Positions 40,123 through 43,252 of a stretch of DNA of 64,000 nt are shown piece by piece. The translations under genes and the position numbers were made by a program. A model generated the notes under the pieces. It searched no databases. It had not been told where the DNA came from and was given only the letters and a program-made list of their open reading frames with translations. The first letter of the stretch is position 1. Each line of letters begins with the position of its first letter. Source of the stretch: Perkinsela sp. CCAP 1560/9 (lineage: Eukaryota; Protista; Euglenozoa: Kinetoplastea); assembly GCA_965644495.1 (NCBI GenBank), contig CBFFSA010000005.1:434001-498000 (forward strand). The letters are read 5' to 3'.

Positions 40123-41406
40123 TATGCAGTCTACTCGATATCAAGAGTGGAAATCTTCGCGGCAACCAGTACTCACATTACTTCGGCGCCTCCAATTGAA
40201 CCGAACATGAATTTTACTTCTGGGTTCAAAATTTATGAGTTGCAGACGGATACGGAGCTCGCTTACTCCGTTGCACCGAAATCTCACTCCCCATATAGAA
40301 TTGTCCTTTTCCTTAGGAAGAAGATCTAGATCTCGAGGATCAATCTTTTGGGAATTTCGACTGTGTGTATCTTCAATTCATTACAAGTAATCCACTATTT
40401 TTCTTTCATGATGCATATTGCATGGAAATCTACACTTTGGAAATATATTTTTGTTTACTTTTTTATGTTACTTCATCAAACTCTCTTTTTAATGCCTGGC
40501 ACCTCTCCATTTTGATGGCCCTCGGTGTGAAGCGTCTGCTTCTACAGGTTTTGCTGAGAGAGAAGAATACCATCTGCGAACATAATTGCGAATATCTTCG
40601 AATAGGGACACGAATGGGGTACATGAGTTTATTTTGTAAACGTTTTATGCATTATTTTGTATTTGATATCATTGTTATGTTGCGACGTTGGTATTTTTTA
40701 AATGAATATACTAGCTAGTAAAACTAACTAGGGGAAGGGGATTCCTTCTTAATCTTGATGAAATGATCTAATATGTTTCATGTGCATCTTGGTCTGATGA
40801 ATCATTATCTATTTTTAAAACAAATGAAAAAATATCATATTTTAAATGTGAATATCTATTTTTAAGTATGGATTCCTGTTTGCAAAAGAAAGGCCGCGTG
40901 AGATCCTTTGCTTTACCCTCCGAAACTCAACTTTCTCGTTTTCTAAGAAATATTACGAAAGTGCACGCAAGTTGGACAGAAGTAAATGAAGCGTGTAGCT
41001 GGCACCGTGTTAAGTGTCATCAACATGGATTCGTTCGGAGATTGCACTGGTCTGGCCGTGATCTTCGTGGTTCTCTTTACTGGAGATCTCTTCCTCATAC
41101 GGTATCTGTTCTCTTTTTGCATGAAAATTTATTAACGGGCGAGATCATGCTGGGAGACCTACCTCACGAATTATACAAAATTGATGTTGCTAGGAACAAA
41201 TTCTTAGGTCATATGCCAATCAATTAAATGCCGCCTGGTACTCATAAGTGGTTGGCATATATGAATTCGCTGGAAGGTTGTCTTGATCTTTCTCAACTTC
41301 CTCAAACATTACATACCTTGAGTGTCCATGAAAATAGATTTTCTGGAAATATTGATTTGTCTTCGCTACCTTCAACTTTGGTGCATTTGATACAGTTGGT
41401 GATAAA

Positions 41407-41550
41407 GATACAGTTTCTGTACCTTGTTGGTACATTTTCCCTTTAGTTCATCTTTTCTTTCCCCGGCAACGGGCATAATCTTACTGTTTTATATGCCCGT
41501 TGCCGGCCGGCACTAAGGCCGAAACTGTCCCTCTTTCTCGGCGAAGTAGG
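41407..41550 (+). ncRNA. SL RNA-like sequence, copy 1
   Basis: GATACAGTTTCTGTACCTTGTTG|GTAC matches the conserved kinetoplastid SL 3' core and donor (T. cruzi GATACAGTTTCTGTACTATATTG|GTA); followed by stem-loops and AAACTG (Sm-site-like). The canonical AACTAA 5' end is absent; 3' limit is a guess. Confidence 0.5.
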
Positions 41551-41979
41551 GGACGCGCTTCCACCCCATCACCCCTCCCCGGCTCACTCCTTGAGTGGGT
41601 TTTCTTCCCTCCCCGGCTTTCTTCCCTTCGCGCCCTTTTCTTCCCGGGGAGCCATGCGCCATGGTGGCCTCCCTTGAGGACCGCTGGGCGTGGCTCTGCC
41701 TCGCATTATCGCGAGGCAGCGGTCGGTTGCAGTGCGCCCCTCCGGCTGCGTAAAGAGGTGGTGAGTTGCCTGGACCACCTCTACCGACTGGGACCGAGTC
41801 GGTTGCAGTGCGCCCCTCCGGCTGCGTAAAGAGAGGGCGAGTTGCCTGGACCCCCTCTACCGACAGAGTCCGAGCTAAACCCCCTTGGTGCGACATCCGT
41901 CAATACGGATTGTGCCGATGATATCGGCTGTCGCATCAAGGGCTGTATCTCTGCGCCAACGAGCGCATGAACATCAAAA

Positions 41980-42121
41980 GATACAGTTTCTGTACCTTGT
42001 TGGTACATTTTGCTAGCCCTTCCTTTCTTTTCCCGGAAACAGGCATATTCTTACTTTTAAATGCCCGTTTCCGGCTGACTGCTAGCTGGAACTGTCCCTC
42101 TTTGTCGCGGAAGTAGGGGAC
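41980..42121 (+). ncRNA. SL RNA-like sequence, copy 2
   Basis: Identical 32-nt GATACAGTTTCTGTACCTTGTTGGTACATTTT, with covarying downstream hairpins; 3' limit is a guess. Confidence 0.5.
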
Positions 42122-43252
42122 GCACTTCGCACTCTTCACCTCTCCCCGGCTCGCTCTCTTCGAGTGAGCTTTCTTCCCTCCCCGGCTCTCTACTTCTCGT
42201 GCTTTCTTCTCCCGGGAGCTATGCGCCATGGTGGCCTCCCTTGAGGACCACTGGGCGTGCTACAGCGGGAGGACACGTTGTATGCGTGTATAGGGGATGC
42301 GAACTTGCACCCCTCTCTCCCTACATGCTGTAGCGAGTGCGGCGGTAACGGACCTCCCCATGATGCATCATGATCCACGATAGACCATCTGACAGCATGA
42401 ACCCACGGCTTGACCGTGTTGCAGCATGAACCATGGCTATACGTGCTGTAGCATGACCGATGGGCGACTCGTCTCCTACCTCGCACTCCACTCTCTGTGT
42501 GACACCCGTCGTATGCGGGTCATGCGCTGATGGTATCGGCCGTCACACAGAGAGACGTATCTCTGCGCCACGAGCGTATGATCATAACCTTGGGCGGAAA
42601 CGGCTTTGAAGGCAAAATCAAAATTGACAATTTATCTAGCAGGTTACAATCTCTCCGACTCAATGACACCCATTTAAGTGGTACTATAGATGTTAAAAAA
42701 TTACCAGCATCATTATCCAAGCTCAATATTCAAAACTCAAGTTTATTATTGCTTCACGAAAAGTAACCTCATCGCTAACTGATTCATCTCAATCAGGATT
42801 CTCAGAGTCGTAGCGCAGCAAAGGTACTATAGATTCTGCATACGGTATTGCCAAGCTTGAACTCTGTCATTGTGGGTTTTACTAAGTTTTACGGATTGCA
42901 GCGCAACGTTGACCTACTTGTACTTGCAAAACGTTTTTCCTCTTGAAGTGCTCTGCTCCCTCAACGGATTCCCACAAAAAGTGCCAACAAGTTATGAAAG
43001 GGCCAATATAAAGAATACGAAAGAGGGAGTAGCCTTAAAGAAAATCATATGGAATAGGTTCGGACAGCTTGAACTTTACTTACGATGTCAGCAGTAATCA
43101 TGCTTTATATTTTTGGTAAACGTTCTAAAAATGTTTCGGTTCCTATTTATGGTAAAATTGCATGGTAAATTCGACATTCCTGCACCTCAATCAATGGACA
43201 AGATAAAAACTCCTCTCTAATCCGCACGAGGCAGAATTCCACGTGCACTTAC

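What the first reader, a model, noticed from the sequence alone, without database searches (positions are those of the whole stretch)
41390..42586. Mobile structured RNA carrying a spliced-leader exon core and splice donor, inserted as a tandem dimer without target duplication
Seen: a 1197-bp non-coding insert splits an LRR between codons TTG (41387-89) and ACC (42587-89). Removing it restores an exact 23-aa repeat (LPSTLVHL|TLGGNGFEGKIKIDN) with no TSD and only 1 nt of boundary ambiguity. The insert is a 17-nt stub plus two head-to-tail units (41407-41979, 41980-42586), each starting with an identical 32-mer GATACAGTTTCTGTACCTTGTTG|GTACATTTT. Established: this matches the conserved 3' core and GT donor of kinetoplastid SL RNA (20/23 to the T. 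cruzi exon 3' end as I recall it). Unlike SL arrays, the units lack the AACTAA start, are not homogenised, are structured along their whole length and sit inside a protein gene. Inference: a non-autonomous mobile RNA (SL-derived SINE/retrozyme-like) that mimics SL RNA. It might use the trans-splicing machinery to be processed, circularised or spliced onto mRNAs, and insert by a TSD-free route (reverse splicing or tyrosine recombinase). Alternative: orphon SL RNA genes.
Basis: partly seen in the sequence, partly recalled or inferred. Interest (0 to 1): 0.92.

Follow-up and report, generated by a model that had tools for sequence, protein, structure and literature searches.

The report
Spliced-leader-headed retroposon pair in LRR gene
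The insert is two stacked, very young copies of short non-coding "jumping" elements of a kinetoplastid. Each begins with a copy of the cell's own spliced leader, and R2-like retrotransposon enzymes probably placed them at one fixed codon of a leucine-rich-repeat gene. A second haplotype in public reads still has the empty site.

Summary
Window 41390-42589 holds a 10-11 nt junction stub, unit A (41401-41979) and unit B (41980-42589).

- **Families.** A and B belong to two related families of a dispersed superfamily of 480-610 bp non-coding elements. About 279 genome sites carry this spliced-leader (SL) head, and copies are 96-100% identical.
- **The head.** It is this organism's own SL exon, not merely a T. 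cruzi-like core. The real SL genes lie elsewhere. Copies start at varying SL positions (nt 3-20, mostly 10-12), so the template RNA began with the SL.
- **Likely mobiliser.** All families end in a motif, ATCTCT-hairpin-ATGA-tail, that is shared with R2-like LINEs (zinc knuckle plus restriction-like endonuclease) lying next to several copies.
- **Target.** 12 of 29 A/B copies sit in sense at one phase of the 23-residue LRR unit, against a 0.6% background.
- **Empty site.** Public read contigs hold an empty allele, ...CATTTG AGC TTGGGC.... There is no target duplication, 1-3 nt are lost, and the element's terminal ACC replaces codon AGC.

The most likely reading is non-autonomous riders of site-specific R2-like LINEs. 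Reverse splicing, tyrosine recombinase, retrozyme and orphon SL gene readings are not supported. How the SL|GTAC junction arises is unresolved.

This scan had already noted the same system on other DNA of this genome.

The parts
40871..41389 (+). 5' part of the interrupted LRR gene. 23-residue repeats end in LPSTLVHL at the insertion point. An in-frame TAA at 41226-41228 means the gene is probably already a pseudogene.
   Evidence: Translation. The family is very large: 2797 first-look candidates in the genome.
41390..41400 (+). 5' junction stub (ATACAGTT+GGT). These are extra bases made of leader fragments. 41390 (A) may be the first base of the original AGC codon.
   Evidence: Together with G41389, the stub repeats the first 9 nt of unit B's head (41980-41988).
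41401..41429 (+). Unit A head: DNA copy of the organism's SL exon, nt 10-38.
   Evidence: Identical to the SL gene L033:1801-1838:-.
41430..41979 (+). Unit A body. It holds GTAC, a pyrimidine tract, a perfect 15-bp hairpin (41463-41506) and a conserved 5' module reaching to ~41695. A 76-nt tandem duplication (41722-41873), a Y-shaped 3' domain (~41882-41942) and the terminal motif (41946-41979) follow.
   Evidence: 100% identical over 577 nt to a copy at G000:C2:589513-590089.
41980..42002 (+). Unit B head: SL exon nt 16-38. The start is ambiguous over nt 13-16 because of A's terminal A run.
42003..42589 (+). Unit B body. Its 5' module is homologous to A's and its centre is family-specific. 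The Y-shaped 3' domain has the same architecture as A's but different stem sequences, and the terminal motif ends ...TCATAACC.
   Evidence: 98-99% identical to at least 10 dispersed copies.
42587..42589 (+). Element-borne ACC that stands where the empty allele has AGC (LRR position 9).
   Evidence: Empty-allele joint 41390 to 42589 with G between, in runs X1 and X2. ACC also ends B copies outside LRR genes.
42590..42776 (+). 3' part of the LRR gene (LGGNGFEGKIKIDN..., stop at 42774-42776).
   Evidence: Translation.

Best explanation
**What it is.** Units A and B are two independent, recent insertions of short non-coding, non-autonomous retroposons. They belong to a superfamily whose members all carry three parts:
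- a 5' head that is a DNA copy of the host spliced-leader exon followed by GTAC;
- a conserved, structured 5' module and a family-specific centre;
- a structured 3' domain that ends in ATCTCT-hairpin-ATGA plus a short A-rich tail.

**Shown here.**
- The copies are dispersed and near-identical.
- Their 3' junctions are exact, while their 5' ends are ragged within the leader.
- The template RNA therefore began at or near SL nt 1.
- The insertion in the window is absent from a second haplotype and made no duplication.
- Insertions strongly prefer one phase of the LRR repeat, in sense orientation.
- R2-like LINEs in the same genome carry the same terminal motif and sit stacked against such copies.

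**Inferred.**
- The LINE protein recognises the shared 3' motif and nicks the LRR target between codons 8 and 10 of the repeat.
- It then primes reverse transcription of the rider RNA on the nick and joins the 5' end imprecisely.
- B landed first. A then landed at the same nick position in front of it.
- The leader head most likely marks a trans-spliced template RNA. In the same genome, other element families have the full leader joined to unrelated bodies, and some carry nested leader relics.
For: **Copy number and identity**
- The A+B query gave 42 scored matches of 369 candidates, at 96-100% identity and each as a single unit.
- The SL 3' 23-mer plus GTA matched 279 sites, against 0 for the reversed control.

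**The real SL genes**
- They form a 297-bp repeat beside 5S rRNA, with a different intron.

**Junctions**
- 5' ends are variable, at SL nt 3-20, and some carry small duplications.
- 3' ends are exact...CATCAAAA for A and ...TCATAACC for B.
- Deeper 5'-truncated copies exist: L064 is tail only, and one B copy starts 40 nt in.

**Trans-splicing signatures in other families**
- Full SL joined to other bodies, and nested relics in L078 and L081.
- Nested relics at 12 places genome-wide.
- The unspliced SL RNA itself was retroposed twice.

**Empty allele**
- Found in 2 runs of one study, with linked flank SNPs.

**Target**
- 12 of 29 A/B copies are in phase, against a 0.6% background (p about 1e-19).
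- 15 in-phase, sense insertions across subfamilies.

**LINE link**
- RT-bearing ORFs end 100-170 nt before A/B copies in L004, L024 and L026.
- Their C-termini match solved R2 proteins over the zinc knuckle and endonuclease (E 8e-12), and the motifs are visible.
- The terminal motif is shared, with five different but always paired stems.
- The B copy in L004 carries a tail like that of its LINE neighbour.

**Structure**
- z -8.2 and -6.2.
- In the 3' domain 83.6% of cells are paired, against 31-48% when slid, and 13 cells changed on both sides (0 of 500 shuffles reach this).
Against: - No LINE with the same GTAC-type 5' module or the full 3' domain was seen in the loci I could fetch. The LINE link therefore rests on the ~35-nt terminal motif, adjacency and target, not on a demonstrated parent element.
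- No source locus with a splice acceptor AG in front of GTAC was found.
- No nested relic was seen among 44 GTAC-type copies.
- The three bases after the leader equal the first three of the real SL intron. A pure trans-splicing origin makes this a 1-in-64 coincidence.
- No RNA data could be laid.
- The filled junctions are not bridged by short-read contigs. These break at the repeat.
Confidence: 0.8

Rival explanations
1. The mobility mechanism is the same, but the head does not come from trans-splicing. Master copies would sit inside SL RNA genes just after intron nt 3 and be co-transcribed from the SL promoter. This is how CRE/SLACS elements use SL genes and R2 uses rDNA. The RNA would then start with the whole SL exon plus GTA.
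For: - The junction is always TTG|GTAC, and GTA equals the first 3 nt of the SL intron.
- GTACC/GGTAC keeps the leader's stem-loop.
- No AG-preceded source locus exists, and these families show no nested relics.
- Relatives of R2-like elements in trypanosomatids are SL-gene specific (PMC12278014).
Against: - No copy in the assembly has the SL promoter region upstream. The longest relic starts at SL nt 3 with unrelated flank.
- Only two SL genes are assembled, and both are uninterrupted.
- Other families in the same genome clearly acquired the leader at diverse junctions.
Confidence: 0.22
2. The head is kept up by template switching. During reverse transcription, the nascent cDNA of the relic would switch onto the abundant SL RNA, homologous through exon plus GTA, and run to its 5' region. 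Every new copy would then end inside the leader, whatever the source transcript.
For: - 5' ends are tightly clustered in the leader, and no flank is transduced.
- 5' junctions carry leader fragments and small duplications.
- SL RNA itself is a substrate for retroposition here.
- R2 reverse transcriptase is known for template jumping (my own knowledge).
Against: - No copy carries SL intron sequence past GTA, as an imprecise switch would sometimes give.
- The idea is purely inferential.
Confidence: 0.1
3. One reading: an SL-RNA-mimicking mobile RNA (retrozyme-like or SL-derived SINE). It would be processed or circularised by the trans-splicing machinery and integrate by reverse splicing or a tyrosine recombinase.
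For: - The head keeps the splice-donor context and a leader-like stem-loop.
- There is no TSD.
- The RNA is strongly structured.
Against: - No ribozyme or any Rfam family was found.
- There are no terminal or split direct repeats.
- There is no intron similarity.
- Ragged 5' ends, 5'-truncated copies and a 3' motif shared with R2-like LINEs point to target-primed reverse transcription.
- The head-to-tail joints seen in reads are stacks at other loci, not circles.
Confidence: 0.04
4. Orphon or dispersed SL RNA genes, or an assembly chimera.
For: The leader sequence is identical to the SL exon over 23-29 nt.
Against: - The copies lack SL nt 1-9, the promoter and the intron.
- There are hundreds of copies with defined 3' ends.
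- The flanks are the two halves of one LRR unit, and an empty allele with linked SNPs exists.
- The same arrangement recurs at other loci.
Confidence: 0.02

Closest known systems
R2 elements and their non-autonomous derivatives (SIDE-type riders of R2; my own knowledge), and the RLE class of site-specific non-LTR retrotransposons generally
   Same: - The C-terminal zinc knuckle plus restriction-like endonuclease of the neighbouring LINEs matches solved R2 proteins.
- The target is sequence-specific, in one orientation.
- 3' junctions are exact and 5' junctions ragged, with no or tiny target change.
- A structured 3' end is shared between the autonomous element and the rider.
   Different: - The target is a codon position of a protein-coding LRR repeat family, not rDNA, snRNA, SL genes or microsatellites.
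- The riders are not obvious internal deletions of a LINE seen here.
- The 5' end is the host spliced leader instead of a ribozyme-processed end.
CRE clade of trypanosomatids (SLACS, CZAR, CRE1, CRE2)
   Same: They are kinetoplastid RLE-type LINEs intimately tied to the spliced leader (PMC12278014).
   Different: - CRE elements insert into SL RNA genes and are flanked by leader halves.
- Here the leader is part of the element's own 5' end, and the copies are dispersed, mostly in LRR genes.
- CRE elements have poly(A) tails and TSDs. These have a short specific tail and no TSD.
DinoSL-relic retrogenes of dinoflagellates
   Same: A DNA-encoded leader relic at the 5' end marks retro-copying of a leader-bearing RNA. 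Nested relics exist in this genome too (PMC5585692, PMC6050394).
   Different: - Those are host genes copied by unknown machinery. Here mobile elements themselves carry the relic.
- The GTAC families show no nested relics.
- The organism is a kinetoplastid.
Trypanosomatid non-autonomous retroposons (RIME, NARTc, SIDER) with the shared 77-79 nt 5' signature
   Same: They are short non-coding riders of LINEs in kinetoplastids, with a conserved 5' signature shared across families (PMC8190864, PMC2323293).
   Different: - Those belong to the ingi/L1Tc (APE-type) lineage, with poly(A) tails, TSDs and an internal promoter or ribozyme head.
- Here the partner is RLE-type, the head is the leader, and insertion is site-specific.

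Membership tests
LINE-dependent non-autonomous retroposon (SINE-like) | Short, non-coding, dispersed, many near-identical copies | tested here: met
   - Units are 579 and 610 bp.
- No ORF of 250 aa or more lies in 41390-42589.
- 369 candidates, 96-100% identical copies.
- 279 leader+GTA sites.
LINE-dependent non-autonomous retroposon (SINE-like) | 3' end shared with an autonomous LINE of the same genome | tested here: met
   The terminal ATCTCT-hairpin-ATGA-tail motif is present in families A-E and at the 3' ends of three R2-like LINE copies, with compensating stems. Only the last ~35 nt are shared in the LINE copies I could read.
LINE-dependent non-autonomous retroposon (SINE-like) | Pol III-type head (tRNA, 7SL or 5S derived) with an internal promoter | tested here: not met
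   The head is the spliced-leader exon. No Rfam family matches. So it works like a SINE but is not a classical one.
R2-like (RLE) site-specific retrotransposition | Partner protein with reverse transcriptase, CCHC knuckle and PD-(D/E)xK endonuclease | tested here: met
   - RVT_1 matches lie upstream of L004, L024 and L026.
- The CCHC, RPD, ELTVPWE and K..KY motifs are visible.
- The profile hits R2 structures 9nl3_A and 9dou_A at E about 1e-11.
- A single-sequence fold failed, pLDDT 31.
R2-like (RLE) site-specific retrotransposition | Fixed target sequence and orientation | tested here: met
   12 of 29 copies lie at one LRR phase, against a 0.6% background. 15 of 15 in-phase insertions are in sense. 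The remaining copies lie in microsatellites, other elements or unique DNA.
R2-like (RLE) site-specific retrotransposition | Exact 3' junction, variable 5' junction, no or minimal target change | tested here: met
   the empty allele shows no duplication and 1-3 nt lost.
R2-like (RLE) site-specific retrotransposition | These LINE proteins actually mobilise A and B | not testable with these tools
   This needs biochemistry or observed new insertions.
Leader-relic retrocopy (dinoflagellate type) | Relic identical to the host SL exon and ending at the exon's 3' end | tested here: met
Leader-relic retrocopy (dinoflagellate type) | Evidence of trans-splicing for this family (source acceptor site, or nested relics) | tested here: not met
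   No AG|GTAC locus was found, and 0 of 44 copies carry nested relics. Nested relics occur only in other families.
SL RNA gene (orphon copy) | Complete exon, upstream promoter and SL intron | tested here: not met
   The copies lack nt 1-9. Their upstream DNA is the LRR gene or another element. There is no intron similarity, p 0.4-0.8.
Retrozyme or other ribozyme-bearing circular RNA element | Self-cleaving ribozyme motif and flanking direct repeats | tested here: not met
   No ribozyme family was found even at E up to 10, and no terminal repeats.
Tyrosine-recombinase retroelement derivatives (VIPER/SIRE, TATE, DIRS) | Split or inverted terminal repeats shared with a recombinase-encoding element | tested here: not met
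   No such repeats lie at the unit ends. The termini are shared with R2-like LINEs instead.

The most novel reading that the evidence does not exclude
The leader head may be an adaptation rather than a passive scar. A whole LINE/rider system of a kinetoplastid would use the host's spliced leader to give its RNA a capped, defined 5' end. It could do so by trans-splicing, or by co-transcription from SL genes. The head would be kept in a leader-like fold: GTACC/GGTAC, plus an invariant 8-bp pairing of leader ACAGTTTC with a downstream GAAACTGT. The system would home to one codon of an LRR family with more than a thousand members, where the element's last three bases stand in for the displaced codon. 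It could thereby drive turnover and diversification of that family.
Probability: 0.25. Interest if true: 0.8.

Novelty: new variant of a known kind. Interest (0 to 1): 0.66.

Why it matters
Site-specific RLE retrotransposons are known to target multicopy RNA genes and simple repeats. A protein-coding repeat as the preferred landing site, hit in frame and in sense, would be a new target class. It would also be a possible engine of gene-family turnover.

Leader relics at element 5' ends show that the element RNAs carry the host spliced leader. In the papers I could search, this was documented only for dinoflagellate retrogenes, not for kinetoplastid mobile elements.

The polymorphic empty site makes activity testable. 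The element families are young enough that new insertions could be looked for between strains or culture lines.

Tried and rejected
- **Rfam.** Run on the window and on the insert, it found nothing. It also does not recognise the real SL RNA gene, so this says nothing about leader-likeness.
- **Empty site within the genome.** Searches with the flanks found no close paralogue. The empty site came from read contigs instead.
- **Longer stretches around long-looking heads.** From then on, no new loci could be cut, so a LINE with the same 5' module could not be sought.
- **Harbinger-type DDE ORF next to a tail fragment (L064).** It looked like a possible partner. Other copies of that ORF carry neither head nor tail, so it was rejected.
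- **LINE C-terminus.** The single-sequence fold was useless, pLDDT 31. phmmer against solved structures gave nothing. A three-sequence profile did find R2.
- **Source locus.** Searches for an AG acceptor in front of GTAC found only chance-level matches.
- **SL intron against element.** The alignment showed no similarity.
- **Literature.** A search for the leader sequence itself gave 0 papers. One broad search was uninformative.
- **Run X7, guessed to be RNA.** It gave one 153-nt contig: a B 3' end joined to another flank. That is too little to show expression.
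Full report
**What is there**

The window is G000:C5:434001-498000 of a 21-Mb genome. All ORFs of 250 aa or more in it lie on the + strand. A housekeeping protein, PIGA, is 70% identical to a free-living prokinetoplastid transcriptome and 64-67% identical to trypanosomatids. The organism is therefore a kinetoplastid outside the well-studied trypanosomatids.

At 41390 a GC-rich stretch interrupts a gene made of 23-residue leucine-rich repeats. It holds two head-to-tail units that share an identical 35-mer at their starts.

**The head is the organism's own spliced leader**

Two real SL RNA genes lie on another contig, in a 297-bp repeat beside a 5S rRNA gene. Their exon is L033:1801-1838:- and is followed by an intron starting GTATGAG. 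Unit A carries exon nt 10-38 and unit B nt 16-38. In both, GTAC follows.

Forty-four distinct copies from 60 loci show the leader part starting at different positions. Most start at nt 10-12, some at nt 6-9 or 13-20, and one B-like copy at nt 3. Several have small duplications or leader fragments at the junction. Upstream DNA is unrelated between copies.

Only a few copies are truncated more deeply. The template RNA therefore began at or very near SL nt 1, and a few bases were lost on joining. The missing leader start is not a designed terminus.

**A dispersed, young superfamily**

The insert as query gave 369 candidates. The scored matches are single units at 96-100% identity, and none is the A+B pair. 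The dimer therefore arose in place from two insertions. Unit A is 100% identical over 577 nt to a copy on C2.

The leader 3' end plus GTA occurs at 279 sites, against 0 for the reversed control. Comparison of copies resolves at least five mosaic families of 480-610 bp:

| Region | Pattern across families |
|---|---|
| First ~290 nt | Conserved |
| Centre | Family-specific |
| 3' domain | Conserved |

**Structure**

Units A and B fold far better than shuffles, z -8.2 and -6.2. Folding each family's 3' end on its own gives a long stem enclosing internal hairpins (two in A, B, C and E; one in D), then a small terminal hairpin and a single-stranded tail.

On the alignment, 83.6% of cells pair, against 31-48% when partners are slid. 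Thirteen cells changed on both sides, which 0 of 500 shuffles reach. In the 5' module the perfect hairpin keeps pairing through C-G to A-U changes. Leader ACAGTTTC is predicted to pair with an invariant GAAACTGT about 100 nt downstream, and GTACC pairs with GGTAC across the leader/body junction. "Structured" is confirmed.

**The empty site**

Contigs of two public runs of one study join 41390 directly to 42589 with one G between them. They carry three linked differences in the 5' flank, at 41236, 41239 and 41350. One of the runs also holds the reference flank haplotype.

The pre-insertion sequence was ...CATTTG AGC TTGGGC..., that is LVHL-S-LGGN. Three things follow:

- The insertion is polymorphic and hence recent.
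- No target duplication was made, and 1-3 nt of codon AGC were lost.
- The ACC that seems to restore the repeat is the element's own end. All B copies end ...TCATAACC and all A copies ...CATCAAAA, including those outside LRR genes.

Short-read contigs break at the repeat, so the filled junctions themselves are not bridged.

**Target preference**

Of 29 distinct A/B copies, 12 have the LxxNxLxG part of an LRR unit starting 2-4 nt after the element's ...CAT(C/A)A. The element's last bases take the place of repeat position 9. The same test on both strands of the window gives 0.6%, a binomial p of about 1e-19.

With families C and D included, there are 15 such insertions, all in the gene's sense. 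The LRR family is very large, with 2797 first-look candidates. Other copies lie in a (GT)n tract, in other retroelements or in unique DNA.

**Who moves them**

The genome is crowded with reverse transcriptases: 1072 candidates, of which 150 were scored. In three loci an RT-bearing ORF ends 100-170 nt before an A or B copy. Its C-terminus shows a CCHC knuckle and the RPD, ELTVPWE and K..KY motifs.

A profile of the three C-termini matches two solved R2 proteins at E about 1e-11, over exactly the knuckle and restriction-like endonuclease. The language-model search agrees that this is a non-LTR RT C-terminus.

These LINE 3' ends and all rider families share ATCTCT(G)-hairpin-(C)ATGA-tail. The hairpin stem differs but stays paired: GCGC/GCGC, GCAC/GTGC, GTAG/CTAC, AGTGAT/ATCACT and ATCT/AGAT. 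In L004 the B copy even carries a tail resembling that of the LINE next to it.

Together with exact 3' and ragged 5' junctions and the tiny target loss, this is the anatomy of target-primed reverse transcription by an R2-like enzyme acting in trans on a rider RNA. I could not show a LINE with the same 5' module, because no further genome sequence could be fetched.

**Order of the two insertions (inference)**

A's complete 3' end abuts B's head. The stub before A, together with G41389, repeats the first 9 nt of B's head. This fits A landing at the same nick position, in front of an already resident B, with a 9-bp duplication of B's head plus three extra bases.

**Where the leader comes from**

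In the same genome, other element families carry the full leader joined to quite different bodies. Some have nested relics that start just after the AG inside the leader, and the nested-relic pattern occurs at 12 places genome-wide. The unspliced SL RNA itself was retroposed twice, with an A-rich tail. Retro-copying of leader-bearing RNA is therefore common here, and trans-splicing is the simplest source.

For the GTAC families, several points argue for caution:

- No locus has an acceptor AG before GTAC.
- No nested relics were seen.
- GTA equals the first three intron bases.

Similarity to the SL intron stops there, p 0.4-0.8, so an SL-RNA-derived body is not supported. A master copy inside an SL gene, or template switching onto SL RNA, remains possible. 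No RNA reads were available to decide.

**Comparison with the known**

Trypanosomatid mobile elements are reported as four clades. The RLE-type CRE clade inserts into SL genes and has poly(A) tails and TSDs (PMC12278014). Riders such as NARTc and SIDER share a 77-79-nt head with APE-type LINEs. Leader relics as tags of retro-copying are documented for dinoflagellate genes.

I found no report of leader-headed elements in kinetoplastids, nor of an RLE element family homing to a protein-coding repeat. The library is limited, so this is absence of a find, not proof of novelty.

**Earlier notes of this scan**

These describe the same system at other places of this genome: leader-headed LINEs and riders, R2-like partners and the LRR target. 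My reading was formed before I saw them and agrees with them. I tested the LRR target, the R2-like nature of neighbouring LINEs and the shared 3' hairpin myself. New here are:

- the empty allele with the exact pre-insertion codon;
- the compensating stems of the terminal hairpin across LINEs and riders;
- the negative tests for a source acceptor and for intron similarity.

**Verdict**

This is a real, recent, polymorphic double insertion of two non-autonomous leader-headed retroposons at the preferred LRR site of R2-like LINEs. It is a new variant of known kinds (an RLE LINE with a rider, and a leader-relic retrocopy). The origin of the leader/GTAC junction remains open.

Noticed in passing
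L033:1504-1541:- and L033:1801-1838:- (G000:C1 ~661,300); 5S rRNA at L033:2228-2346:+: Only two canonical SL RNA genes are assembled (297-bp repeat), and they lie beside a 5S rRNA gene. That is a very small number for a kinetoplastid, so the array may be collapsed in the assembly.
   Followed up: partly
L066 (G000:C2:801573) and L067 (G000:C25:23939): These are retro-pseudogenes of the unspliced SL RNA. They run from exon nt 3 through the whole intron to ...GGGGCTTA, followed by an A-rich tail, in two unrelated flanks. This marks the 3' end of the SL RNA and shows that a poly(A)-dependent retroposition route exists as well.
   Followed up: partly
L062, L068, L075, L078 (ORF starting ~40-60 nt after a full SL relic): A different leader-headed, multi-copy family encodes an ORF with an LsmAD (ataxin-2-type) domain (Pfam E 5.5e-07). 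The copies sit behind poly(A) runs of upstream elements.
   Followed up: partly
L078 and L081; 12 genome sites: These carry nested leader relics: the full SL followed by its last 16 nt, and in L078 also by its last 10 nt. Shorter fragments (GTTG, CTTGTTG) lie between leader and body in L071, L075, L080 and L068. Not all of them start after an AG.
   Followed up: partly
L064:187-978:+ and ~50 further places: A Harbinger-type DDE_Tnp_4 transposase family is present, with intact 396-397 aa ORFs at several loci. One copy, next to the SL genes, has a 5'-truncated ~200-nt rider tail inserted at its end.
   Followed up: partly
L007 (G000:C7:500749-504354): A B copy sits inside another retroelement, between its RT domain and an RNase H-bearing ORF.
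   Followed up: no
window 41226-41228: An in-frame TAA lies in the LRR gene upstream of the insertion. The empty-site haplotype contigs show no difference from the reference at this position, so the gene is probably a pseudogene regardless of the insertion.
   Followed up: partly
L005 / L072 (G000:C14:309457-310710): Two riders of different families sit in adjacent repeats of one LRR gene, each in the same phase and separated by one 23-residue unit.
   Followed up: partly
whole genome: RVT_1 gave 1072 first-look candidates in 21 Mb, many with open frames of 1000-2800 aa. This is an unusually retroelement-rich small genome.
   Followed up: no
L004 ~2100-2130 (tail of the B copy): This B copy ends in an ATC/ATAT-rich tail like that of the R2-like LINE directly upstream, instead of the usual ...TCATAACC. 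It is possibly a chimera made by template switching.
   Followed up: no
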